In this document: in pieces, positions 18,180 through 50,700 of the stretch
Layout: every line of letters begins with the position of its first letter
Numbering within the stretch: the first letter of the stretch is position 1
Source of the DNA: Gnetum montanum
Taxonomy: Eukaryota > Plantae > Gnetophyta
Reading direction: 5' to 3'
NCBI GenBank assembly: GCA_015680685.1
Contig: MNCI01000596.1
Location: forward strand, 539,559-603,558
Length of the DNA: 64,000 nucleotides
Position numbers and translations under genes: made by a program
The notes under the pieces: generated by a model
Databases searched by the model: none
What the model was told of the DNA's origin: nothing
The model's input: the letters and a program-made list of their open reading frames with translations, nothing else

Positions 18180-21100
18180 ATGTCTTCTTCTCACAGGCGA
18201 GATGGATCCAACCCACCAATGCTGTAGGAGTGTTGGGTGGTATACGCACATCTAGACGAGTATATCCCTAACTTCACCTTTATCCTACATTAGGATGAGC
18301 ACCTGCGATGGCAGGACATGGAGGGTAACATCATATTAGCTCTTGATCTGTCGGTTCTTGGAATGCTACTTCAAAATCTTACTAGACTAGGCATTCAGAA
18401 CCGTGGTGTACAATACATAATGGAGGATCATGACTATTGAGATTATCGTCCAACTGAGGCACAACATGCACGGGATCAGCAATAGGTGAAACGCCATGAA
18501 CACTTAAAGGGGAAACAGTTCAGTAACCCTTTGTTTTTGCAGGACCCGCATGATGATGAGGAACCTATTTTTCATGATTTCCATTCGGCTGAACCTCCTT
18601 CGATGCATCAGATCATCCAGTCCATCATCCAAAGTAAATAATCAAGTGATTGGGAGCACCAAGATGATGAAGGATCACGTAAAAAAGATCGTGGTAAGGG
18701 GAAGGATGGACATAAATATAGAGGCCATCATCAGAGTAGAGGAGGAGATCGACATCGGGGCAGTGGTAGTTCTCCTCCCTCTTCTTCATCTTCTTGTTCC
18801 ACCTTGTCTTCACCAGGTTTTGACTCCGATTGCAACCATGGTAGGAAGGATCAGGGTGATGGTGATTGAAAAGATTGTTGGGATCACAAGGACTAATGGG
18901 GATGATGTGAGGAAAAGCATGACCAATCACACGAGTCTCACTGTCAAGAAAGGAGAGGTAGCCAAAATCGTCACAGATGTCGTGGCCAACAATAACACTA
19001 TGACTTCGATGAACCACTACTGGCTGCCCAAAGCATGCTTAACATAGCTGAGGTAGTTCAAATACCTAGTAGGCACTTGAAAGATAGTTGGATCAAGTGC
19101 CTTGACATGAACAATATCAGCAAATTTAAAGGGGGATACAATTGTGATCCACAGATTCACTTGCAAGCATTCCATGATGCTTGCACCCTGCAGAACATAG
19201 ACAATGATTGGCAAAAACTTAGGCTATTCCCCTGAACACTCATCAAGGAAGCAGAGAGCTGGTACTAGTCTTTGGAACCAAAATCAATTAGGAGATGGAG
19301 TATGATGCTAGAAATTTTCAATGATAAGTATCAGACCTACTCCAAAGTGGCTAACCTGAGATGATAGATCCAAGGGTGGAAACAAGGTGGTCATGAATCC
19401 TTGGATGCATCCATGGGTAGATATTATTCATTATTACATCGGTGCCCTAGTCATGGCTACTCTCAACGAGAACAACTCTGCCATATCATAGATAGGCTTT
19501 GCTTTGAAATAAGAAAGACCCTGGGCATTTACACTCAGGGACAACTATATGAATTGAGGGCCCATTAACTATAGCATCTCATTGAGTAGGTGGCTAAAGA
19601 GGAAGGGGAATTAAGGAAAAAAGAGTGCAGAAGAGTATAATCGGGACCCTTCCATCTGAAGGAAGGACGTCCAATTTTGTGAAGAGGGGGAAGAATCACC
19701 ATTGGATGTAGTGGTGTACTGAAAAACCTTGCCCATACAAAAATTTGCCTCTAAAATTTTGGCCAAGGTTGAGAAAATGTGAGACTCTTTGGATGAAAGG
19801 TTTCAAAGCANNNNNNNNNNNNNNNNNNNNNNNNNNNNNNNNNNNNNNNNNNNNNNNNNNNNNNNNNNNNNNNNNNNNNNNNNNNNNNNNNNNNNNNNNN
19901 NNNNNNNNNNNNNNNNNNNNNNNNNNNNNNNNNNNNNNNNNNNNNNNNNNNNNNNNNNNNNNNNNNNNNNNNNNNNNNNNNNNNNNNNNNNNNNNNNNNN
20001 NNNNNNNNNNNNNNNNNNNNNNNNNNNNNNNNNNNNNNNNNNNNNNNNNNNNNNNNNNNNNNNNNNNNNNNNNNNNNNNNNNNNNNNNNNNNNNNNNNNN
20101 NNNNNNNNNNNNNNNNNNNNNNNNNNNNNNNNNNNNNNNNNNNNNNNNNNNNNNNNNNNNNNNNNNNNNNNNNNNNNNNNNNNNNNNNNNNNNNNNNNNN
20201 NNNNNNNNNNNNNNNNNNNNNNNNNNNNNNNNNNNNNNNNNNNNNNTAGCATCTCAGCTAAGTGGACTAGAATCAAAACCATGGAAACACCCTTTATTCT
20301 AGCCCAATATCCCTAACACACCCTTACTTTCACCTATGGCCAGTGCCTTTGAACCTCCAATTGCCTCCACTATTCAATCCTTCAAGTAACATTCAAGCTA
20401 AACACCCTCCACAATACAAACCGTCATGCTCACACATGCTGTGATAGATTGGATAAAGGCATGTCATCTCTCTTGGAAATTGATTAATCTGGGGAGCCCT
20501 CTCATATACCTTCAAGTGGCAAGAAACGAGCCATGCAAAGCTCTCTTGGATTTGGGATCAGGTGTCAATTTGATTTCACATGATATGTACAAGACTTGGA
20601 ACCTGCACCTGATGAAGAAAAGTAACATTCAGCTTGGGTTGACAGACCAATCCATAATTGTACCTTTGGAATTGGTAGAAGATATCATGACCACTATTTG
20701 TGGGTGCTCCTATCCTACTGACTTCCTGGTCATCCGGGTTGACAATTGCAAGGGAAATTTTCCAATCATAATGGGGAGAGCCTGGCTTAGCATGGTGGAT
20801 GCATGATTGGGACTTTGAGATCTTTCCCTTGAAATTTCAAAAGAAAATCCTTTCAGGAAGATCAAGAAGAAGCACGTTTTATGCATCACGTACAGTGACT
20901 CAGGGTGCAATTGTGTGCAGCAACTTTGGTTCACTAAGTGAACATCTATTCAAGCATGTAATCGGTGTGTCGAAGAATCCCAAGTTCAACAATGCCTATA
21001 TGTAGTAGCCACAAATCAAGAAGGCACCCAGTGGCTGAACGTTGACTCTAATAGCAGCACTTTATGCATAGAACCAATTGAGGGCCTTGTATGTGCCTAT

Positions 21101-34510: not shown

Positions 34511-35117
34511 CTATAAAGGTACAAGAAAATTATGCTTTCAAGGCACAAAAGTGACCTTGGGGGGTTCAGGGGGGCCCCGAGGGGTAGGGGGAGGAAAGGA
34601 TGTGTGTATGCCAAAATACATGCTTAAAAACTAGATGCTTAAACTGATATACATTTTTGATACATGTATGCAAAATAGACTTTCCATCTCTCATGATCAA
34701 CATCCATAAATACCAATACCAATTAGAGACCAATACATCAATGAAACAAACTAGTACTATGTCTTTTAGATATATCAAGTTGATAGGAATCATAATAGAG
34801 ATCTATCATAACAAAAGAAAGTGATGTACATAGAATTTATAGTAAGTAAATACTTAGGAAAACACTTAAATTCCCAAGCTATGGATAGTAGTATAGCCAC
34901 AAAACAAGCCTAAATTAAAGATGCTACTAAAAAAAAAAAAACTTGTAGCACATAAGAGAAGATTATAAAGCATGCATATATATAGCAAGAACATAATAAT
35001 AAATGAGCTGAAAATAAGAGTAGAATTGAAAAAAATTCCTTGTATAAAAGTGATGATATGAAAGTAATAGAACAAAGGAAAAATCAACTTTATACCAAGA
35101 TCAAAATTAATGGCTTA

Positions 35118-35418
35118 AAAACCTATAAGCATGAAGAATTTAAACTTGCACAACATATATATGCTCTAGAATGTTGGTAAAAGTACCCTAAATTGATCCT
35201 CAAATAAGCATAAAAGTAATATATATATATATATAAAGCATAACTTAGAGTACATAGAATCGTTAGTTTTTATCCACAAAAGCCTGTAAGCATGAAGAAT
35301 TTAAACCTACACAACATATATATGCTCTAGAATGCTAGTAAAAGTACTCTAAATTGATCCTCAAATAAGCATAAAAGTAATATATATATATATATAAAGC
35401 ATAAATGAGAGTACATAG
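35118..35418. repeat. ~160-bp tandem duplication containing (TA)n
   Basis: AAGCATGAAGAATTTAAAC...AAAGTAATATATATATATATATAAAGCATAA...GAGTACATAG occurs twice. Confidence 0.9.
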
Positions 35419-36788: not shown

Positions 36789-37395
36789 AATGAAGAGAAG
36801 AGAGGATGATTGAAAAGCAAGGATTAAAAAACCCAAAAAATCATGATAGATCCTTTTAAAAAATGCTTTGAACTAAGGTCAATTTACCTAACGTATATCT
36901 AATCAACCTATTGCAAAGCCCAAGAATTTTAAATAACTAGCTCATCATACAAATGGTCAACCTATTAAAGGTGCATTCTACTAGGGATTGGTTAATTGAT
37001 GGAGGTTCTAGTTGATCTTAACCCTAAGAACAAGTACAAGACTACATGCAAGCCAGTTAACCCATTGAAAAATATGGTCGACCTTAATAATGTATAATTA
37101 ATTACAAATACAAGAGGTAGCCTCAAACATGCATAACAAGGATTGAGTAGTTCTAGATAATTTAAATGTCAAAAAAAAGTAATTAAAATGTGAACATACA
37201 ACTTCCTATTCTAAGTATAAACACTCAACCTTCCTAATGTAGGTTGGGTTAGTTATGTATCTATGTTAGTTGGGATATGGCCCAACTTCCAACCATCTTT
37301 TGCTATCTTCAAATTGGTTGGAAGGAGATGGCATAAGTTTATTCTTTTCTTTGATATAGTCCTTGTGGAATAAAATGTTAGGCACACATGCTTAC

Positions 37396-37999
37396 TATTA
37401 CATCCCCATTCCCAAATGATGCTATTACCTAATGAAGATGGTGTCTCTTCATAACAAGTGTTATTGTCATCTTAACAAGATCCAAAAGGGTAGTTGTGAT
37501 TAAGACCTGAAAGGGCATGTTGTAATAACAAACATGGCTCTTAAGGTAATCTTTGGGGGTTTGACCTAAGGCATTTATACTTGGGGTAGAGGTCATGCCA
37601 ACATGGAATGGTGGAGTCGGTATAGGCAAGTCATGGAGTGGTAGAACTAGTATAGGCAAGTCATAGGGAGTTGGGTGAAGCGGGACAAGAAGTGGACTGG
37701 CCATCCCTTTTGGCTAAGTTATAGGCCTAACCATTGTGGTAGTGCTAGATTGCCTCTAAGAGATAGATGCTAAAGGAAGAAAACTCCAAGGAACACTCTC
37801 AGAGCATGATCTAGATATGCTATTCCATATTAACAAAGCATTCTTTTCTTTCTCTTTCTACATTTTTCCTATTATTTCATTTATACATAATGTCAAATAT
37901 CACTTATATTTCACATTTGGTATATTTTCTTTATACACATAATGTCTAATATATCATATATTTGATGTTTGCCATGACATTTGGGGATGGGATGTCACA
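37396..37999 (+). repeat. 5' LTR of the CCR4-carrying element
   Basis: Direct repeat of 42680-43284; start decayed to TATTACA. Confidence 0.95.
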
Positions 38000-39499
38000 A
38001 TGGGTATCAAAGCAAAACATAATCCAAGGACCATTCAGAACCATGGGCTGACTACAACATGAATCAGATGATGAACCTTGAAGCCACAACACAGGGAAAG
38101 TCATTGATCATCACTAAATGTACCATATGTTTGTGATGTAAGTCAAAAGATACCTTTCCATTGATATCACAAACAAGGGATCAGACATGCAACCAGTAAA
38201 ATTATTTCAAGGACATCATTAACTGATGAAGATTTGATCACACCTCATCAAAATTTATCAATTACAAGAGATGTTGGTAAGACAATGATACATTGGTCTA
38301 AGTAACTCTTACCCATCTTAATACTAATTATTAATTAATTAGGGTCATTGTTAAATATCTTTCAAGAAAGTTAGTAACCATGACCTGAATTGATTTTATT
38401 TTGTTGAAATTCACTATCCAAGTAATCTAGAAAATTCCAAGTTACCATATGTTAGCCTAGAAATGTTAATTCAACAAAATAGGCTAGTTTCGTCCTTTTA
38501 ATTCCTAAAAAATTAACTCCATTTTTGAACTAAAAACTATGTCTAACATGTAGTACTCATCGAGATGATTCCAATGGTACAAATTTTGTCTTGAACAAAC
38601 TTACGATTTTGGAGATATTGATGTTCAAAGTTTCTCATCATATGTGCATTAAAATAATATTAAATTATTATTATTATTATTAAAGTCAAAATTTTAGGAC
38701 AAGAATCAACCTGGAATCACCATTTACCCATACCAAACCCTTGCCCTATCATTGGTTGAACCACCACATCAATTGTTGAGGCAAGATAGATTAAAATAAT
38801 AATAAAAAGTTAAAAGAAAGAAACTTTAATTTTGATCTGGAAGTTAGGGGTTTAAACCGAGGACCCCCCTCATTTAGTTTATATATATATATCATGGAAA
38901 AAAATAAAAAAAAATAAAAACATATAATTAAAAATAATATTTTGAAGACCATGTCAACTTGCAAAGGCTGCGCAAGCATTGCAGACCACATCGGCCTTGC
39001 AAGGGTCGTATAGGCCCTTAAGGTAGCATAGCACCTATTAAGGGCTACCAAAACCCTTGGTTACTCCGTCCTCCATAGTCATTATCATTCTGCCACATAC
39101 ATTCATCGTCTATCATGCATCTCTGCAGCTCCCCTATCGCCCATCGTCCTCTACTAGACTACCATGCATCTCTATAGCTCCATTGCCATTGTGTGCCATT
39201 TACATTGAAATTTGCAGGGCCGTTACTGTCGATTCCTTAGCATAGACCTTGCTATGGCTGTGTTGGCCCTTTCTATGAGCTGTGTAGGTCCTAACATGGG
39301 CTGTGTGGATCCTATGCAAGGTGCGCAAGCTTTGTTTGGAGTGCCATGATGTTTTTGGCCGTTGTCATCTGGTTGCTACTGTTGCCATCATGCTCGTCTA
39401 GAAACCCTAGCTTGCCTGCTGCCTACCCTTGCATTGCCCTACAACTACCACTTCTAAAACCAGCACCATTTTCTACCTACCACCTGTCATTTTCATCAT

Positions 39500-39900
39500 C
39501 GATAACTACCTCTAGCACTATGGATAACTACCTTTAGCACCATTAATAACCACCTCTAGCACCATTGATAATTGGCTTTAGTGCTATGGAAAATCATCTC
39601 TTTGGACACTACTGAAAACTGCCTCTTTGTGTGCAGGCCTAGTTAAGGGTTGTGCTAACCCTGACACAGGTCACACCAGCCCATAACAAGGCCATGCAAA
39701 CCCTGAGACTGGCCATGCTGGCCTAGGGGAGGGCCATGGGGACCATGTAATAGGCCTCATAGGCCATGTGGAGGGCCACATAATCCCTGGGGAGGGCTAC
39801 ATAATCCCCAAGAAGGGCCATGTGATCCCAAAAAGGGCCCTCAACAGAGTTGCACAGGCCCTAAACATGGCTGCATGGGCCTAGGGATGAGTCATGCATG
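39500..39900. repeat. Two short degenerate minisatellites (~22-bp ATAACYACCTCTAGCACYATKG; ~21-bp GGAGGGCCACATAATCCCYRR)
   Basis: About 5 copies at 39502-39630 and 5 or more copies at 39725-39850. Confidence 0.6.
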
Positions 39901-40306
39901 CCCTAAAAGGGTGTTGCACAAGCTTAGGCTGCACCACACAACATAGCCCTTTTTTGCCGATTTCACCATTGCCATTGCCATCCCTGCTAATGTGCACCTC
40001 CATTTGCTGTGTTGCTTACCTTGTCTATGTCCTTGCCCATTGCTGTCCACTGCTCAACCATCTAGTAACCACATAGGCTACCGTCGGTGTGCCACTACAG
40101 CTATTGTTGCCATTCACAATGAAATGACAAATTCTCCATTATATGATGAAAAATTTTCAATTGTCCATTAACTGACAGAAAAATTTGAAATTCCTTGTCA
40201 TTTGACAAGGAATTTAAATTTTCATTATTGTATCGTTAGTTTAAATTAGGAACTTGCAAAAATAATTTTCAAAATTGAATTTGGTGCCCTGGTAACCACA
40301 AGAATA

Positions 40307-40370
40307 AGAATTTCATAATTGAATGTGTTTGCCCTAGAGTAGAACTGGGATGGGTGACCTCTTAGGAAGT
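40307..40370 (+). promoter_or_regulatory. 5S rRNA-derived fragment spanning the Pol III internal control region (A box, IE, C box)
   Basis: Ungapped match of about 48/64 to plant 5S as recalled (AGAGTAGaACTgGGATGGGTGACCTCtTaGGAAGT, 31/35 in the 3' part); 5S ends absent; followed by TTTTCTTTTT. Confidence 0.85.
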
Positions 40371-41059
40371 TTTCTTTTTCGCGTCAAAGGTTTTAGAATC
40401 CAGAAGCTAGAACTTTTAATTTTGGAAGCCTTTTTTAGTGAATAAAGAGTCATTTCCTATAGATTTTAACCTTCCAAACCCAATGGTGGAGTTAGAATTA
40501 TCCTAGGGAATCCAAAAAATTAGTTTTTACTCCTTGCCCCATATAGTGCCTCAAGATTCTCAAAAGTTTAATTTTCATACAACTAAGCATACGATGTTCT
40601 TTTTCAACATATGAATAGTCATTTCTAACATTCTTCATCTTTCTAAACTCAATGGTGAGGTTAGATTTATCGTTTGGGCACCCAATAATTTGATGATATC
40701 ATAAATTCAACCATTTGGGTTTTAAGATTTAGTACATAACCCTTGCAGATAGTCTTAAGATCACTATGTCACGTCATTAATTACACTGCCAGAGTCAGTG
40801 TTCTTAAGGGTGATAGAAAAGCTACTAAGAATTAGATAATATAGTTACATATTACTAAAATTATATGATGTCATTAAATATTACTAAAATTAGATAACAT
40901 AATTATAAAAATAGATTTATTTGATTATTAGCTGATATATTAGTTAATGATCAGTTGATGTATTTGTTGGAAAATTAGTTGAAGAAATAGAACAATCTTT
41001 AACCATGAAGAAAATGGTATATTAATTCATCTTGCAATCAAAACATAGGACAAAACAAC

Positions 41060-42310
41060 ATGGAGACTCAAAATCTCATTTCAACAAGGAGTATGATACT
41101 CATGAAGAGAAATGATTCAAAAAAGAATCCAAGAATAGGAATGAAAGTTGCAACATACAATATGCTTGCAAGATCCCTTGTGAGTAAGAAAGAATATCTA
41201 CTATGTCCATCATGGGCCTTGAATTGGCATGAATATTGATACCCATGCATTTTAGTAGAATTACAAGATTTGAATGCTGATGTCTTGTGGTTACAAGAAG
41301 TCTTACCATGGGAATTTCTATATTAATGCCAACTAGATTTGGAAAAGATGGGATACAAAGGTATTTATAAGCATAAAGGTTCTTGTGGAAGTTCTTCTTT
41401 TGAGCTATACAGATTAGCATATTGTAGAAATTACAACATGGATAGTTGTGCGATCTTTTATAAAGAAGCCAAGTTTGAATTAGTACAAAGATTTGAATGG
41501 AGTTTAGAAAATATGATTTTTGAAATTCCAGAACTTCAAGAGATAGTCAAGAAAGAAAAATTAAGATTTTAGAAAAATCACATAGCCCTGGCAGTGATTC
41601 TAAAAATTCAATTATCAAGAAGATGTATATGCATGGTTAAAACCCATTTAATTGCCAAACCAACATGTTTAGATGTTAGACTATGTCAAGGAGAATATTG
41701 GATTAAGCAAATAGAAGAAAGTTTGAAGAATAAGTTATTACTAAGTTATACTACTTCAGTTCCATTTATTTTTTGTGGAGACTTTAATGCAAAAGTTGGA
41801 GGTAGTGTTTATCAATTCATAAAATATGGATATGTAAAGAAATCTTTGGAAGATGAACCTAACTTGAAGAAGATGTTTTCATCAATTTAGCATGTAGTTC
41901 CATTAGCCAGTGCATATTTTGCTTACTTTAAATCTTTAGTAGATAAATCAAGCTCTAAAATTTAGGAATAGATGATGTTGATGGATAGCACTCATCAAGA
42001 ATCATATTTTACAAATTACTCTACTATGATTAATGAAGATGGATCAACAACATTCTTCATTGAGACTTTGGATTATATTTGGTACAATGCATGATTCTTT
42101 CAAGTTACCAAGTTACTAGAGTTAATTTCTAAAGAAGAAGTTAAGAAGAATCAAGATCAAGCCTTGCCATCCCAAACAAGATCATCTGATCACATACCAC
42201 TTATGATAGAATTACAATTACTTGCATCAATTTATAAGGTTGATCAAGATGAAGAAGTATCTCACTCTTACATTTATTTGATTAATCTTATTATTTTATT
42301 CATTGTTTAA
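41060..42310 (+). pseudogene. CCR4: CCR4a/b-like deadenylase (EEP nuclease domain), no intron within the nuclease domain, captured in an LTR element; 7 in-frame stops
   Basis: Single frame of 417 codons: KVATYNMLA, CPSWALNW, ADVLWLQEV, DSCAIFY, THL, PFIFCGDFN, PLASAY, FTNY, TLDYIWY, LLEL, ALPS, SSDHIPL. Stops at 41237, 41324, 41570, 41888, 41963, 41969 and 42092. Confidence 0.93.
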
Positions 42311-42679
42311 TTTATATTTCAATTAGAGAAGTAAAATATCTATGATAATAAAAATTGGGGATAAAGAGTTTTCCTTGCCTTCACTTGGGTAACCAGATCC
42401 AAGTTGCACTTTGTGTGATCCTAGTTAGAACTGGTGATTGGTGGTTGATAAATCTTTAATTCATTATTTTTTCATTATCTTGGAAAAAAAAGTAATATTT
42501 AATTTTCCATATATTTTTCTCACATATATTTTGTTTACAGGATAAGCAAGAAATAACTTCAAGTTCAAAGGAGAAATCAAATTATTGGAGCACAAGATCA
42601 TGAAAGAAAGCATTAGAGCTGGAAAAAGATAGAGAATGTTGACTCATTTAAGGACAAACAAAACCTAAGGGGGGTATAT

Positions 42680-43284
42680 TGTCACATCCCCATTCCCAAA
42701 TGATGCTATTACCTAATGAAGATGGTGTCTCTTCATAACAAGTGTTATTGTCATCTTAACAAGACCTGAAACGGTAGTTGTGATTAAGACACGAAAGGGC
42801 ATGTTATAATAATGGACGTGTCTCTTAAGGTAACCTTTGGGGATTTGACCTAAGACATTTATACCTAGGGTTAGAGGTTGTGCCAACATGGAATGGCGGA
42901 GCCGGTACAGGCAAGTCATGGAGTGGCAAAGCCAATATAGGCAAACCACGAGGAGCCGGGTGAAGTGGGACAGGAAATGGACTAGCCATCCCTTCTAGTT
43001 AGGTTATAGGCCTAACCATGGTGGTAGTGTTGGATTGCCTCTAAGGGATAAATGTCAAAGGAAGAAAACCCCAAGGAACACTTTTAGAGCACACTTCAGA
43101 TATGCTATTCCATATAAATAAAGCATTTTTTCCTTTCTCTTTTTGTATTTTTCCTATTATTTCCTTTATACATAATGTTGAATACCACTTATATTTCACA
43201 TTTGGTATATTTTATTTGTACAAATAATGCCTAATATATTGTATATTTGATGTTTTCCATGACATTTTGGGCTGAGATGTCACA
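42680..43284 (+). repeat. 3' LTR of the CCR4-carrying element
   Basis: TGTCACATCCCC...GATGTCACA after the PPT. Confidence 0.95.
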
Positions 43285-44793
43285 CTTTTCTAATTGTGCA
43301 CTCTTTTACCTTCTGCTTGTACTTGCCTTGGTTAGATCTTGAAAACATCATGTTATCATAGTTATAATAGGTTCTATAAGGATAATAATATTGAACATGC
43401 CCATAATTATGACAGTAGTAACATTGAGTATATGAGTTTCTAGAAAGAAATTCATACATTGGGAGATAATTCCACTTGCCTTATCTTCTTTATGTATTTT
43501 GTGCATGCTTGTATCCAAGTCTAGATTTGTCATCAACTTGTGCTTATTTTTCCATCATCATATTTAAATTGGCTATTGCTTGAGTGAATTTCTTATGATC
43601 ACTCTTGAGATTTGTAATGTTTTAAGCTTGATGCCCAATAGAAACTTAAGAGTCATTCAATTACTTGAGGAGGTTATTGATTTCTTCCTTCTTTTCTGAA
43701 ATTTGAGTGTCTCTCTCCTTAAGTCATCTTTGGAAAAAGCTACATCTAGCTTATGGATCATCATGAAGAGTATTTTTCTCTTGTAGTTCAACAACTTAAG
43801 CTTGTAGCTTTAATTCTTGTTCATAAAACTTGCTCTTCATCTTTATGCAAATACTTTGAAATTTGATGGAAAAATTTAGAATCAATACATACCATTCTTT
43901 TTTATCCTTAATCTTCTCTTATTCAACTAGCTAATCCTCTTCTTCAAGTACCATAATGAGAATAAGATTATATTCTTCATTTATCTCTTCATCAGATGAG
44001 GAGTTCTCTAATTTATCCTAAGATTAGAGAGTCTTTTTTGTCTTTAGACTTGCCCCTCCTTTCATTTTTCTTACTTGGACTTTTTGATGCAATGTAACTA
44101 TAGCCATGATAATGATAATACTAAATGCCATTTTTCTTCTCATTATTTTTATCATTGTTCAAGGGTTTCTTTCCCTTATACTTTCTTTTGAGAATTCTAC
44201 TGAATTTGCTTATTAAGAGGGTTAATTATTCTTTATTTAAGTCCTTCAAATTAGCATCTTCTACTTCCTTTGATAATTTTGGTATAATGCTCTTCCTTGA
44301 TTATGCAAGATCATTATCCTCTTAAAGAGACATTCATATATTTTCAAGTTGCCTTAGGGTTCATCAACTTTCATGAGATTGATATCCCTCACCTAAAGAA
44401 TGGTTGTCCATTTAGAGTGGAATCTTTTGGAAAGGCTTCCCAAGATTTTTTGATAAATTCTTGAATCGAGATAATCTTTACTAAGCTCTTTAAGTGCATT
44501 TGCAACTTTATTAACTCTAAAGAAATACTGCTTTATAGTTTCATCTTCTCTTATTTTTAAATGTACTAACTTGTGATTGAAAACTTGTGCCTTATGTTGC
44601 TTTACTAAAGTAGTTTCCTAATGTGTAGACTCAAGGAGATCCTAAATCTCTTTTTCTATTTTACAACAAACATCTTAGTTAAATTCTTTTAGGCATAAAT
44701 CATAGTAGAAAGTCTTCATGATCTTAGAATTTTCCATATGTGCCCTCTTGTCTTCTTCTATTAAAATTTTGATACGCTAGGGTCTTATACAAG
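43285..44793 (-). pseudogene. Middle of SIRE-like gag (UBN2-type region and two zinc knuckles)
   Basis: KILGSLSKRFHSKWTTI, GI*YYHYHGYSYIASKSP, CYYCHNYGHVQYY; continues at 51502-51671 (N-terminus) and below 37395. Confidence 0.75.
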
Positions 44794-44798
44794 AGCTT

Positions 44799-47700
44799 TG
44801 GTGTAGGGACACTTCTTATAATCCCATTGTTCTTCCTTATGTGTATGTTTTGCAAGTTTTGGGCTTTTTGGAGATGTCTTGGAGGTCAAGGAGATGTCTT
44901 GGTTGGAAGTGAAGGCTTCATAGAAGACATCTTCAGTTGATAGGAGACGTCTTGCTTGTAGAAGAGACATCTCAAGGAAGATGCCTTGGAAATAGTAGAG
45001 ACATCTCATGTAAGAAATCTTGCCTTACAGGAGATGTCTTACCCAGGGAGGAGATGCCTTTTAAAAATATTTTACATGTCATTCAAAAGTGGTGTTTTTA
45101 TGAGAGACAAATTGAGAAGGCTAGAGATGACCCATACAATTGGGAGACTTCCAAATTAGGCTATTCTAAGTTAGAAAATAGTTGGGAGATGGAGGAAAAT
45201 GTAGAAATAGCATGGGAACCCCAAGTTGAACTTGTGGAATATTTTCCTAGGTTTTTATGTTTTTCTTCTTAATAAATATTTTGGTGTTTCATGCTTGAAA
45301 AGGATGGATAGAGAGGAAGTAAGAGAGAGACATCTTGGTAGGAGATCTTGAGTTAATAAGGACTTGAAAAGAGTGTAATTGAGCACATGGAGTGAGTGCA
45401 TGTGTGGTTGTAGCTCTAGGATCAATATGTGTGGATTGGCCTAGGTATTCTTGTCTCTTATTTACTTCTCTATATTGAATCTCAGTCCTATGTTGTGGAA
45501 GAGATTTTTCATTGGTTGTGTCTTGCATTGAGAATAACCATTATGTGGTTGTAAAGCCTCATGCTCTACAATATCGTTGGAGTGTTTTTGAGAGGTTTTG
45601 ATGTTTTATGGATTTTGAAAACCATGTTGTAATCTTTAATCAATTAATTAAAGATAAATAGTTTTCTTGTTTTCTAGTAAAAGTTATGGTCTTTTCATAA
45701 TATTTGGATTTAATATTTAAAGGTGAATTTTTATTGCAGTGAACTTGATCCAACATTATTAGTATTAGAAAATAGTTGGGCTTGAACATGTTTCAAGAAT
45801 TTTTATTTATTTTAGATGGCACCAAAGAAAAAACTGGTTAAGGCACTAAAAAGATACATGAAGATCATGAAGTCTTCCTTCTATATGATGGTTTCTTGGT
45901 TGAATAAAATTAGCATAAAGTTAGAAAAAAATGCCAGTCCTAGCCATATCCACACATACAGAGGTGATGAACATGCATGTTTAGATGAAGAAGTCTCATA
46001 ACTAGGTGGAGATGAAGCAAATGAGGAGGAAGGATAATATAGCTATAAGAGTGTAGGATTTCATCAGCTAAGGATTCTAATGGGAGGGAATCCTATTTCT
46101 CATATGAGAACTTTGAGGGCTTCAATGGTGGAAAATACTTCTTCTCCAAGTAAGCTTTATGAGGAAGATGAAGCAAGGCTTTCTAGAGCATTCAAAAATG
46201 CTACTAAATGTTTGTACATGGAGTTGAAGACCTTCAATATTGTAGATGGCACCAATGCTTTTGCAAGTTAGCTAAAGATACTTGAGAGGCATTTTTAGTT
46301 GGAAGTGGTACCAAATAACTTGAAGGCACTTATTGTTGAATCTAGATTAGAAGGTATGACTTTTACTTGGTGGGAAAAGGAGTCCCAAAGTTATGAAAGA
46401 TGAAATTGTCAATCGATTAGAGATTGAGATTTGATGAAATGTAGGTTGAAAAAAATTTGAATAGTCTCATTAGAGGCAACAGACCATTATGAGGTTAAAA
46501 TTCCTAAGGAAAGGTGACAAGGATGTCAAAGAATTTTACATTGAATTTTATGATCTATTCCATCAAGCTAAAGTAAATTTGGAGGAGTATGAATAGGCTT
46601 CAATCTTTTTAAGAGGTCTTAAAATGATGTACTAGTAGGAGTTATCTTTTAATGAGCCACAAACTCTTGATAAGGCTTATGATTTAGCACTTAGAGATAA
46701 AAAGAAATTAAGTGGATTTTGAAACAAGAGTAAATAAAATTTCAAGAGTAAGGAGAAAGGATCCAAATATGAAAAAAGATCCAAGTCTAAATCTAAAGAC
46801 AAGGAAGGTAGCCATGTCAAGAAGACTGAAAGAGGCAATGAGAAGGACAAGACTAAGAAGGACCATGGCAAGGAAGACAAAGGTCAAGACAAAATATTAT
46901 TAAAAATCTAGTGCTTTAAGTATGAAGAATGCGAACACAAGCAATGAGAATGTTCACTTCACAAGGTAGCTAAGGGTAAAGATGTGCAAACCATTGATGT
47001 GGAGGAGACATCAAGCCAAGATCTTTAGAGGGGTATTCCTAATTCTCCAAAAATTGAAGTTTCTAAATTAAATTCTTGTGCATTCATGGGGAATGTGAAT
47101 AGAGGAGATCATCCTAATAGAAAACTATTGCTTTGGATTAGAGCTAGATGTTTACTTAGTGGGGAATGGATTCATGTTTGAATTGATGGGGAAGCCTAAG
47201 AAAATGTTATTTCTTCTATGACATTTGCTAAATTGGGTTTGGTAACTAATCCTCATCCTAGACCATATAAAGTACTTTGATCATTTAGAGATTTTTCCTT
47301 AAATGTAAGGAAATAATATATATTGAAATTTAAAATTGGAGGCTTTCATGATGTTGTGAAGTGTGATATGCTTTCAATAGATTGTGCTGATGTAATTCTT
47401 GATAGACCTTGGAATTTTGATAATGCTATTCTATTTGATGAAGTAAGAAATATGGGAAATGTACCTAGATTTGATGAATTCATGAGTTGATTGATATGAT
47501 GATTGAATAAGTAAGATAATAAAGCTTACTTAATGCTTTCTTAATCCTTCTAGGAGAGAGGGAATACATTAAGAAACATGATGAAATAGGTTTTTATTTT
47601 GTTGTTGTAACAACAATTGCTACTAACCATGATGATGTGTAGGTTGAACCTCCAATAGATGTGCTAGGCTTAAAGGAGAAATTTTTCAAGGTGTTTAAGG

Positions 47701-50700
47701 GAAAATTGGATGAATTGCTACTAATGAGAAATGTACAACATTAGATTTATTTTATTCCTAGAACTAGCATTCCAAATGAGAGGGCTTACTAGATGGCACC
47801 AAATTACTGGTTTGAATTACAAAGGCAAGTAGAGGTGTTACTTGGAAATGGGTTCATAAGAGAATCCATTTTACCATGTGTAGTTCCAATAGTGCTAGTG
47901 CCAAAGAAGCATAGTGATGAATGGAGGATGTGCATTGATTCTAGGGTAGTGAATAGGATGATAGTGAGTACAAGTTTTCTATTCTAAGAATGAATGATAT
48001 CATTGATGTCCTTACTAATGCTAAAATTTTTAGCAAAATTGATTTGAAAAGTGGATATCATCAAATCAGAATTAGGCCTAGTGATGAGTGGAAGATAGCT
48101 TTTAAGATACTAGATGGATTATTTGAGTGGTTGATGATGCCATTTGGACTCAAGAATGAACATGCTACATTCATGAGGATGATGCATGATGTATTGAAGG
48201 GCTTGATTGGTAAGTGTTGTATTGTCTTTTTGATGATATTTTGGTGTAAAGATTTAATGAGGAAGAGTACTTGGATAACTTTAGGATGGTGTGTCATATT
48301 TTGGAGGAGGCATAGTTAGTGATCAATGTGAAGAAAAGTCATTTCTTCAAGAGGAAAATCACATACTTGAGTCATTTGATTTCTAAAAATTAAGTTCAAA
48401 TGAAAGATACCAAGGTGAAGACTATTAGGGATTGGCCAAATTCAAATGTTGGGGAGGTAAGATCATTCCTTGGTTTAGTATGCTTTTATAGATGGTTCAT
48501 TAAAACTTTTAGTGGTATTCTATGGACTATGTTTAGTTTGTTAAAAAAAATTAAATATTTTAGGTGGGATCATGAAACCCAAAGAAGCTTTGACTCATTG
48601 AAAGCAAAAATTTCTAGTGAATCGGTGCTTGCAATTCTAGATATCTTGAAGCTTTTTTAGGTGGAGGTGGAAGCAAGTGGAGTTGCCATTGGTGGGGTAA
48701 TTTCACAAGAAGATAGATTTTTTACTTTCTTTTCTAAGAAGTTGAATGAGTCAAGGTAAAATTATAGCATATAGGAGGAGTTGTACGCTATTCTTCAAGT
48801 AATTAAGCATTGGAGTAATTAATTTTTTCCCAAGGAGTTCACTTTGATGACATACCACAAAGCCCTTTAATTTTTAAACTCTCAAAAGAAGTTGAGGATA
48901 GTGCACATGAAGTGGGTTGCATGGTTATAGGAGTTCAATTTTGTATTGAAGCACAGAACTAGGAAAGCTAATGTGATCATTGATGCATTGTCCATTGTGC
49001 GTATGGTTAATTTTAGCATACCTCATGTGGAAGGTATGGAAGATTTTTCTTCTTTATATGAGCATGATATTGATCTTGGGTACGTTTGAAGAAGCCTCAA
49101 GAAGCCATTGTTGAGTAGGATAGGCTAGTGAAGGGACTATCATATTCAAGATGAACTATTATTTAGGAATGGAAAGGTATGTGTTCGTACTTGTGATGTT
49201 AGGAAAAATATTTTGTTTGAAAAGCATTGTAGTAGGATGGTAGGTCATATGGGCTAGGATAAAACATTGGAGCTTGTGGGTAGACACTATTTTTAGCCTA
49301 GTATGACAATAGAATTTTGTATATTTATGAAGAAGTGTTTGACTTGTAAGAAATTCAAAGAAGGTAAAGAAGAGGATGAACATTATACATCTTTTTCAAT
49401 TACCAAGAGTCCATCAAAAACTATGTTTATGAATTTTGTTAGTGATATTTCAAAAATCAAAAGTAGGAATGATGTGATCTTTGTTGTTGTGGATAGCTTC
49501 TCCAAGATGGTGCATTTCATTTCACGAATGAAAATGAGTGATGCTTCTTATGTTGTAAATGTGGTTTTCTCGCATGTTGTAAAGTTGTATAAAATATATT
49601 TAAATATTCTTAGTGACAAAGACTCTAAATTCATAGGTCAATTTTGGGGATCCCTTTGGTAAATTTTAGGGACAAAGTTAAATTTTTCTAGTGTATATCA
49701 CTTATAATTTGATGGCCAAATAGAGGTGGTGAATAAATCCTTGCTAAACATATTGAGATATTTATGTGATGTATAACATAATAGGTGAGAAAACTTATTG
49801 TATCATGTTGAGTTTTCATAAAATAGTGCTTTTCATATGGCAAATGGTAAAAGCCTATTTGAGATTAACTGTGGATTTTATCCAAAGATGGTGGACACCT
49901 TGAAAAGCTTTGATGGTGAAGCTCAATTGAGTGTTGATTTTTTTGCAAGAGATGAGGGATCTCCATGTATAAGTAAAATCAAATCTTGGAAAAAAGGTTG
50001 AGGAGAGAGTCCTCAAAAGAAACGAGGATTAAAAAAAAAGCCTAATTTTGCTATTAATGACTTGGTTTTCATGTGCTTGATGTAGAAGTGATTGAGAGAT
50101 GTTAACTTTTCTAAGTTGAAAGCCAAGAAGATGGGACATTTCAAAATCAAGGCTAAGATCAAGGATAATACATTGGAGATTGATTTACCAAATGATGTTG
50201 TTATGTATTTTATGTTTAATGTTTTAGATCTTGTATACTATCATGAACTAGCTAATGAGGAAATTATACAGGATAGCATTGATGAGTTGAAAGAGGCTAT
50301 TGATCAGTCCAAGTGTTTAATGAAGAAGAAGATAATTGTACTAAAGTGGAGGGAAGCTTCTAGCACTTGGGTTGTTTAGATGCAGGAATATCTAGTCCAT
50401 TGGAAGGATTAGTCCATGAATGATGCTGTATGAGTCCATGAGACCAAACTTCATGATTGGGGGAGCACTTCAACCCTTGCTTTCTTGTTTACATGAGTTC
50501 ACTTTTTGAAGGGTGGAAGAGTTGGTATAGGGACACCTCTTCTGATCCTCTTGTTCTTCCCTACATGTGAGTTATATAGGTTTTGGGCTTTGTGGAGATG
50601 TCTTGGAGGTTAAGGAGACATCTTGGTTGGGAGTAAAGTCTTCATAGAAGACATCTTTAGCTAGCAAGAGATGTCTTGAAATTAGAGTAGACATCTTGCT

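What the first reader, a model, noticed from the sequence alone, without database searches (positions are those of the whole stretch)
37396..43284. Non-autonomous LTR retrotransposon whose only cargo is a CCR4-type mRNA deadenylase, paired with a 5S rRNA-derived promoter
Seen: two ~605-bp LTRs, an iMet PBS and a PPT, with no gag/pol. Inside are a 5S internal-control-region fragment (40307-40370) and, ~690 bp downstream on the same strand, a complete EEP nuclease frame (41060-42310). Known: CPxWALxW, LxSAY, FTN, TLDYI and LLEL..ALPS..SSDH are features of plant CCR4a/b, a catalytic deadenylase of CCR4-NOT, and the host genes are multi-exon. Inference: a retro-captured deadenylase domain has spread as the payload of a TE family, possibly trimming poly(A) tails of its own, helper or host RNAs, or decoying host CCR4-NOT surveillance of TE transcripts. 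I am not aware of such a family being described but cannot search.
Basis: partly seen in the sequence, partly recalled or inferred. Interest (0 to 1): 0.93.

Follow-up and report, generated by a model that had tools for sequence, protein, structure and literature searches.

The report
Dead LTR element carrying CCR4-type nuclease
This is a decayed copy of a plant-type LTR retrotransposon that has no gag/pol and instead carries an intronless, now stop-riddled gene for a CCR4-type poly(A) nuclease domain plus a worn 5S rRNA-like piece. That cargo is unusual, because host CCR4a is known to restrain such elements.

Summary
The anatomy is real. There are two about 604-bp LTRs (87% identical), a tRNA-iMet-type PBS two bases after the 5' LTR, and a purine run before the 3' LTR. 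No gag/pol signal was found in the 4.7-kb interior. One 417-codon frame (41060-42310) has 7 in-frame stops and no frameshift.

That frame is a CCR4-family EEP nuclease domain, not a LINE/AP endonuclease. It falls in the Viridiplantae CCR4a/b clade (SH-aLRT 95) and shares that clade's about 20-residue insert. It keeps 30 of 38 invariant residues, including all catalytic ones, and lacks the N-terminal zinc-finger half. It is only 32-35% identical to any known protein, so it is not a recent copy of the canonical host gene.

The 5S-like unit (40280-40389) is weak by Rfam. Eleven T-runs separate it from the ORF, so a Pol III promoter driving the nuclease is not supported.

Whether the cargo spread as a family could not be tested.

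The scan found this before on other DNA. About 20 unchecked first-stage notes on other pieces of this genome describe the same LTR-5S-CCR4 layout. I found no published description. The copy here is dead, and any function for the element is inferred only.

The parts
37391..37395 (+). Possible target-site duplication, left copy (CTTAC)
   Evidence: Read. Only 3 of 5 bases match the right copy CTTTT, so this is weak.
37396..37999 (+). 5' LTR (604 bp)
   Evidence: Searches show 86.9% identity to the 3' LTR. It ends in ...GATGTCACA.
38001..38013 (+). Primer-binding site of tRNA-iMet type, decayed (TGGGTATCAAAGC)
   Evidence: a 10-of-12 match placed 2 nt after the LTR end.
38014..40279 (+). Non-coding internal domain. 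It includes a G+C-richer stretch (about 38950-40100) with degenerate 21-22-bp repeats and a 13-bp-stem palindrome at 40180-40222.
   Evidence: No Pfam family was found in any frame.
40280..40389 (+). Decayed 5S rRNA-like unit, followed directly by T-runs
   Evidence: Rfam RF00001 at 12.5 bits, below threshold, with a strong core at about 40325-40370. One search gives the T-runs.
40823..40905 (+). A+T-rich 29-bp tandem repeat (2.8 copies) upstream of the ORF
41060..42310 (+). Intronless CCR4a/b-type EEP nuclease frame. It has 417 codons, with in-frame stops at 41237, 41324, 41570, 41888, 41963, 41969 and 42092, and a terminal stop at 42308.
42667..42674 (+). Polypurine-tract-like run (AAGGGGGG), 5 nt before the 3' LTR
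42680..43284 (+). 3' LTR (605 bp), running TGTCAC...GTCACA
43285..43289 (+). Possible target-site duplication, right copy (CTTTT)

Best explanation
Window 37396-43284 is one dead insertion of a non-autonomous, LARD-like LTR retrotransposon. Such elements are copied by the gag-pol proteins of an autonomous partner, here primed from tRNA-iMet.

In place of gag-pol, the interior holds two captured cellular RNA sequences on the sense strand. One is a worn 5S rRNA-like unit. The other is an intronless ORF for only the nuclease (EEP) domain of a green-lineage CCR4-type poly(A) exonuclease, starting about 9 residues before the conserved linker and lacking the N-terminal MYND-like zinc-finger half. 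Both were most likely picked up by reverse-transcriptase template switching onto co-packaged RNAs (inferred).

The ORF evolved for a long time as a working protein gene. It is very diverged, yet the catalytic and invariant residues are kept. It then decayed neutrally in this copy after insertion, roughly 6 My ago at a grass-type rate or about 33 My ago at a conifer-type rate.

Unchecked first-stage notes indicate that the same layout recurs on many other pieces of this genome. On that basis the nuclease is probably a family-wide payload rather than a one-off.

The most likely activity of the intact protein is 3'-5' poly(A) shortening uncoupled from CCR4-NOT. Whether that helped the element is not shown.
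For: Shown:
- LTR pair, PBS position and PPT.
- No gag/pol signal.
- One frame with 7 stops against 26-41 in the other frames, and no frameshift.
- A single tblastn segment, 41147-42217, aligns to residues 235-579 of Ginkgo CCR4a/b. No match to the N-terminal half exists anywhere in the window.
- PDB matches of the pieces: CNOT6/6L (including the pre-domain linker), ANGEL2, yeast CCR4, PDE12 and nocturnin.
- In the EEP-only tree the frame lies inside the streptophyte CCR4a/b plus 'short' CCR4 clade (SH-aLRT 95), and it shares their insert.
- 30 of 38 columns invariant in 18 CCR4 proteins are kept, including N34, E80, H196, D241, N243, D338 and H378. Agreement is 69% at conserved columns against 22% at variable ones.

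Lead only:
- About 20 first-stage notes on other pieces report LTR elements of about 4.8-6.8 kb with a CCR4 ORF and a 5S piece 0.63-0.7 kb upstream.
Against: - No second copy could be examined. There is none in the window. There is no close protein relative among 1.8 billion representatives, the best being 29-38% identical. Both metagenome scans were blank.
- Seven stops exceed my neutral-decay simulation (mean 2.9, P(>=7) = 0.02 at K/2). The ORF may already have been broken in the source copy. The simulation also ignores methylation hot spots and starts from the already decayed sequence.
- The TSD is imperfect, and the PPT is 5 nt from the LTR.
- The frame sits on a very long branch (about 2 substitutions per site). 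With full-length rows it jumped to PDE12, so its exact sister group is unsure.
Confidence: 0.68

Rival explanations
1. Passenger capture. The element picked up the mRNA of a divergent host paralogue (a 'short', zinc-finger-less CCR4-like gene) shortly before it amplified. The conservation pattern reflects selection in the host gene, not in the element, and the ORF never served the element.
For: - The frame's nearest relatives in the tree are zinc-finger-less 'short' CCR4 proteins of about 430-540 aa from uncultured eukaryotes.
- The stop count is above the neutral expectation since insertion.
- Gene-fragment capture by plant LTR elements is common (Bs1, and rice and sorghum surveys; PMC13317346).
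Against: - No such host paralogue is known. The 'short' group is only 33-35% identical.
- The cut falls exactly at the domain boundary with its own ATG.
- According to the notes, the same ORF recurs in diverged copies (unchecked).
Confidence: 0.22
2. One-off event. A processed pseudogene or a rearrangement placed the nuclease sequence in this single LTR element, and the family normally lacks it.
For: No other copy was seen with my tools.
Against: - There is no poly(A) tail or flanking duplication around the ORF.
- About 20 independent first-stage notes describe the same cargo and the same 5S-to-ORF spacing on other pieces.
Confidence: 0.06
3. The 5S-like unit is a working Pol III promoter that drives expression of the nuclease, or of the element, as in Cassandra.
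For: It is on the same strand as the ORF and about 690 bp upstream. The box C region is well kept. The notes report the same position in other copies.
Against: - It scores 12.5 bits against a gathering score of 38.
- It lies inside the element rather than in the LTR, so it would not be regenerated at the 5' end.
- TTTT and TTTTT follow it directly, and 11 runs of four or more T precede the ATG.
- Pol III transcripts are uncapped and not translated (established knowledge).
Confidence: 0.04

Closest known systems
Plant CCR4a/b (carbon catabolite repressor protein 4 homolog 1/2), the poly(A)-specific EEP nuclease of CCR4-NOT
   Same: - Same EEP domain with all catalytic residues.
- Same clade-specific insert between the SAY and EPxFTN motifs.
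- Same LLEL...ALPS...SSDH tail.
   Different: - Only 32-34% identical, whereas streptophyte orthologues are 71-91% identical to each other.
- Lacks the N-terminal half with the PF15801 zinc finger.
- Intronless, located inside a transposon, and now broken by 7 stops.
'Short' CCR4-like proteins of uncultured eukaryotes (clusters P0007, P0199, P0201, P0202, P0206; labelled CNOT6 by JGI)
   Same: Sister group in the EEP-only tree (SH-aLRT 86). Similar length, no zinc finger, and the shared motifs PLASAY, EEV and HIP.
   Different: - 33-35% identity only.
- Their genes appear split into several called fragments on 10-40-kb contigs, so they are probably cellular genes with introns.
- Their organisms are unknown.
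Bs1 of maize and other gene-capturing or LARD-type non-autonomous LTR retrotransposons
   Same: LTR-PBS-PPT frame without pol, with host-derived coding sequence captured through RNA (PMC13317346).
   Different: Bs1 carries fragments of three genes fused into a hybrid ORF. Here a whole catalytic domain with its own start and stop is carried, and it is an RNA-decay enzyme.
Bdelloid rotifer Juno/Vesta LTR retrotransposons with a DEDDy 3'-5' exonuclease ORF3
   Same: A retroelement carrying a 3'-end-processing exonuclease of cellular type (PMC5408684).
   Different: Those are autonomous animal elements with a different nuclease fold. Here the element is non-autonomous, plant-type, and carries an EEP fold.
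Cassandra / Ajax (TRIMp3) elements
   Same: Non-autonomous LTR elements containing 5S rRNA-derived sequence (PMC10886601).
   Different: In those elements the 5S part lies in the LTRs and supplies the promoter. Here it is internal, decayed, and cannot be regenerated as a promoter.

Membership tests
LTR retrotransposon, non-autonomous (LARD-like) | Two direct LTRs with TG...CA ends | tested here: met
   37396-37999 and 42680-43284 are 87% identical. The 3' LTR starts TG and ends CA. The 5' LTR start is mutated.
LTR retrotransposon, non-autonomous (LARD-like) | PBS next to the 5' LTR and PPT next to the 3' LTR | tested here: met
   The PBS is a 10-of-12 match placed 2 nt after the LTR. The purine run lies 5 nt before the 3' LTR.
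LTR retrotransposon, non-autonomous (LARD-like) | 5-bp target-site duplication | tested here: inconclusive
   CTTAC versus CTTTT, 3 of 5 matching.
LTR retrotransposon, non-autonomous (LARD-like) | No gag/pol in the interior | tested here: met
   Pfam on 49 six-frame fragments found no retroelement domain. Sensitivity is limited for heavily broken genes.
LTR retrotransposon, non-autonomous (LARD-like) | Several copies at independent sites | not testable with these tools
Metagenome scans were blank. Only unchecked notes bear on this.
CCR4-type EEP deadenylase (CCR4a/b, CNOT6/6L) | EEP domain homology nearer to CCR4 than to AP/LINE endonucleases | tested here: met
   (PDB). Searches give E of about 1e-42 to plant CCR4a/b.
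CCR4-type EEP deadenylase (CCR4a/b, CNOT6/6L) | Catalytic Asn, Glu, Asp-x-Asn, Asp and Asp-His residues | tested here: met
   N34, E80, D241, N243, D338 and H378 are all present. Their catalytic role is taken from the CNOT6L structure literature, from memory.
CCR4-type EEP deadenylase (CCR4a/b, CNOT6/6L) | N-terminal module that docks onto CAF1 in CCR4-NOT (LRR in animals and fungi, MYND-like zinc finger in plants) | tested here: not met
   tblastn finds no N-terminal part in the window, and the ORF starts 9 residues before the linker.
CCR4-type EEP deadenylase (CCR4a/b, CNOT6/6L) | Open reading frame and poly(A) nuclease activity | tested here: not met
   There are 7 in-frame stops. Activity cannot be tested here.
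Cassandra / TRIMp3 | 5S-derived Pol III promoter inside the LTRs | tested here: not met
   The 5S-like unit is internal, at 40280-40389. No Rfam hit falls in the LTRs.
LINE / AP-type endonuclease | EEP domain grouping with APE/L1 endonucleases and next to a reverse transcriptase | tested here: not met
   All significant matches are CCR4-clade proteins. There is no RT inside the element.

The most novel reading that the evidence does not exclude
A non-autonomous plant LTR retrotransposon family has kept, under selection, its own catalytically competent CCR4-type poly(A) nuclease domain stripped of the CCR4-NOT docking module. It would use this in the poly(A)-tail conflict with the host, for example by interfering with CCR4a-dependent repression of retroelement RNA, or by shortening the tails of competing or helper transcripts.
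Probability: 0.2. Interest if true: 0.9.

Novelty: new variant of a known kind. Interest (0 to 1): 0.66.

Why it matters
In Arabidopsis the host deadenylase CCR4a binds LTR-retrotransposon RNA, shortens its poly(A) tail and suppresses transposition. The element Evade counters this with a tail-protecting RNA triple helix (PMC12501189).

A transposon family that carries the nuclease domain of that same enzyme class, without the part that ties it to CCR4-NOT, would be a second and quite different move in the same conflict. It would also be the first plant LTR element known to me with an RNA-decay enzyme as cargo. My literature searches found none.

If the ORF is only a passenger, the case is still a clean example of whole-domain retro-capture. 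This particular copy is dead.

Tried and rejected
The contigs of the nearest protein relatives could not be inspected.
- The search for related loci with the 105-aa piece in metagenome contigs gave 146 pattern hits, none of them a relative.
- An exact 24-mer from the conserved LTR 5' end found 0 hits in metagenome contigs.
- The search of earlier findings by sequence was blank twice.
- Rfam at gathering threshold over the whole window gave nothing, and tRNA scanning gave nothing.
- The sigma-70 and terminator scan was uninformative for a eukaryote.
- The ESM Atlas added only 'EEP domain'.
- The full-length-row tree put the frame with PDE12 (SH-aLRT 85). I rejected this as long-branch attraction. 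The domain-only tree, the shared insert and the pairwise scores (139 bits against 67 bits) all point to CCR4a/b.
- An RT fragment from the neighbouring gypsy relic did not identify the organism (best 64% identity). The host is a plant-type genome of unknown species.
- A check of whether the flanks form one continuous frame across the empty site was inconclusive.
- The whole frame was read through only with X at each stop, and only inside scripts. Searches in the shared tools used the stop-free pieces separately.
Full report
**What is there.** A direct-repeat search, a pairwise alignment and a self-BLAST agree on two LTRs, at 37396-37999 and 42680-43284. Over 600 aligned columns they differ at 78 sites, with 66 transitions, 12 transversions and one 1-bp gap (K2P 0.147). 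The transition excess is what methylation-driven decay gives. The divergence dates the insertion to about 6 My at 1.3e-8 substitutions per site per year, or about 33 My at a conifer-type 2.2e-9. The host is unknown, so the date is open.

The 3' LTR starts TGTCAC and both LTRs end GTCACA. Two bases after the 5' LTR lies TGGGTATCAAAGC, a 10-of-12 match to the tRNA-iMet primer-binding motif used by most plant LTR elements (the motif itself is from established knowledge). The motif is no rarer than chance in the window, and only its position counts. A purine run, AAGGGGGG, lies 5 nt before the 3' LTR. The flanking pentamers CTTAC and CTTTT agree at 3 of 5 positions, a weak target-site duplication. 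No other copy of any part of the element is present in the 64-kb window.

**Interior.** I took all 49 stop-free fragments of 30 aa or more from the six frames of 38001-41059 and scanned them against Pfam. Nothing related to gag, protease, RT, RNase H or integrase appeared. The interior contains the following:
- a G+C-richer stretch with degenerate 21-22-bp repeats;
- a perfect 13-bp-stem palindrome at 40180-40222;
- the 5S-like unit;
- an A+T-rich 29-bp tandem repeat at 40823-40905;
- the nuclease frame.

**The nuclease frame.** Positions 41060-42310 read as 417 codons in one frame, with seven internal stops and no frameshift. The other five frames of the same stretch hold 26-41 stops.
- The 105-aa piece hits ANGEL2 (8e-6), yeast CCR4, PDE12 and nocturnin in the PDB, and weakly the Pfam EEP families.
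- The first piece hits CNOT6 and CNOT6L (5e-4). The alignment starts in the linker that precedes their nuclease domain.
- The third piece weakly hits CNOT6.

A search of 1.84 billion representative proteins with the longest piece found nothing above 38% identity. No close relative of this protein is on record.

Inside scripts I read the frame through with X at each stop. It then scores about 1e-42 against streptophyte CCR4a/b (Ginkgo, Chlorokybus, Nelumbo). It scores the same against a group of 'short', zinc-finger-less CCR4-like proteins from metagenomes and Logan assemblies.

tblastn of Ginkgo CCR4a/b gives one uninterrupted segment, residues 235-579 onto 41147-42217. Nothing in the window matches the N-terminal 230 residues that hold the PF15801 zinc finger. 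The cargo is therefore intronless and consists of the nuclease domain alone.

**Placement.** A tree of full-length rows put the frame with PDE12 on a very long branch. When rows were cut to the EEP domain, the frame fell inside a clade of streptophyte CCR4a/b plus the 'short' group (SH-aLRT 95), next to the 'short' group (SH-aLRT 86). An indel supports this. The frame, plant CCR4a/b and the 'short' group share an insert of about 20 residues between the SAY and EPxFTN motifs. Protist CCR4, PDE12 and Angel-like proteins lack it.

The frame is nonetheless only 32-35% identical to every relative, whereas streptophyte CCR4a/b domains are 71-91% identical to each other. It is not a recent copy of the canonical host gene.

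**Was it a working gene?** Of 38 alignment columns invariant in 18 CCR4-type proteins, the frame keeps 30. These include every residue of the catalytic set (N34, E80, H196, D241, N243, D338, H378 in frame numbering). It agrees with the consensus at 69% of well-conserved columns but at only 22% of variable ones. That is the pattern of long evolution under protein-level constraint followed by a short decay.

A simple simulation of neutral change at the LTR-derived rate predicts about 3 new stops (P of 7 or more = 0.02). At 1.5 times that rate it predicts about 4.4 (P = 0.14). The simulation starts from the already decayed sequence and ignores hot spots, so it understates the expectation. Even so, the ORF may already have been damaged in the source copy. 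The absence of frameshifts is not informative, because the LTRs show only one indel in about 1200 lineage-bases.

**The 5S piece.** Rfam's 5S model was silent at the gathering threshold and in a 6.1-kb E<=1 search. On a 201-nt slice it aligns end to end to 40280-40389 at 12.5 bits. The 3' core, which includes the box C region, matches well and the 5' half is worn. For this single family over the element, the rescaled E-value is about 0.03 (my arithmetic). I accept it as probably 5S-derived.

I do not accept it as a promoter paired with the ORF, for these reasons:
- It is followed at once by TTTT and TTTTT.
- Eleven runs of four or more T lie before the ATG.
- It sits in the interior rather than in the LTR, unlike in Cassandra and Ajax (PMC10886601).

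A captured fragment of a co-packaged 5S RNA is the simpler reading (inference).

**Family question.**
- Two metagenome scans were blank.

The scan's own index lists about 20 first-stage notes, on other pieces of the same genome. They describe LTR elements of about 4.8-6.8 kb whose only gene is a CCR4-type nuclease. Several place a 5S piece 0.63-0.7 kb upstream of the ORF. These notes are unchecked and come from tool-less readers, so they are leads only. They moved my odds from 'probably one-off' to 'probably a family'.

**Mechanism (inferred).** The element is copied in trans by an autonomous partner. The nuclease mRNA and 5S RNA entered by template switching during reverse transcription, as described for other plant captures (PMC13317346). 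The intact protein would be a Mg-dependent 3'-5' poly(A) exonuclease that cannot dock onto CAF1 and NOT1. In Arabidopsis, host CCR4a shortens retroelement poly(A) tails and limits transposition (PMC12501189). A transposon-borne free nuclease domain could interfere with or exploit that pathway, but nothing here shows it. The ORF lies 3 kb into the transcript, so its expression would need an internal promoter, splicing or re-initiation. This remains unexplained.

**Comparison and novelty.** The frame of the element is ordinary, of the LARD or Bs1 type. The cargo is not. I found no paper describing an LTR element with a CCR4/EEP deadenylase. The nearest parallel is the DEDDy exonuclease ORF3 of autonomous bdelloid elements (PMC5408684).

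**Verdict.** This is a new variant of a known kind. It is interesting if the family and its selection history are confirmed. The copy in this window is a fossil.

Noticed in passing
window 44900-50400, + strand: Decayed Ty3/gypsy pol just downstream of the element, with an RT domain at 47990-48316 (Pfam RVT_1, 3e-12) and a Tf2-type integrase SH3 at 50092-50376. Its best database relatives are only about 64% identical. It shares no LTR sequence with the CCR4 element.
   Followed up: partly
window 43283-43459, - strand: The 3' flank of the element reads on the minus strand as a relic with a CCHC-like CYYCHNYGH motif. The element may sit inside the gag of an older retroelement. Pfam gave no hit.
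   Followed up: partly
window about 19830-20250: A run of N (an assembly gap) produces false long ORFs in three frames.
   Followed up: no
window 37400-37484 and 42684-42768: The first 85 bases or so of the two LTRs are identical, while the rest differs by about 15%. The stretch has no CG or CHG sites, so low methylation-driven mutation may explain this. Gene conversion is not excluded.
   Followed up: partly
window 35117-35418: A tandem duplication of a 141-nt unit (94% identical) lies upstream of the element.
   Followed up: no
window 40180-40222: A perfect 13-bp-stem palindrome (AAATTCCTTGTCA..TGACAAGGAATTT) lies about 60 nt upstream of the 5S-like unit. It drew only chance-level Rfam hits.
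   Followed up: partly
proteins P0007, P0199, P0201, P0202, P0206 (metagenome and Logan): A distinct group of zinc-finger-less CCR4-like proteins from unidentified eukaryotes is sister to streptophyte CCR4a/b. Their genes seem split into several called fragments on 10-40-kb contigs. Their organisms and genomic context are unknown.
   Followed up: partly
other pieces of the same genome (notes s1-813203, s1-833676): First-stage notes mention other repeat families in this genome carrying J-domain or Hsp70-like ORFs. Cargo-bearing non-autonomous elements may be common here.
   Followed up: no
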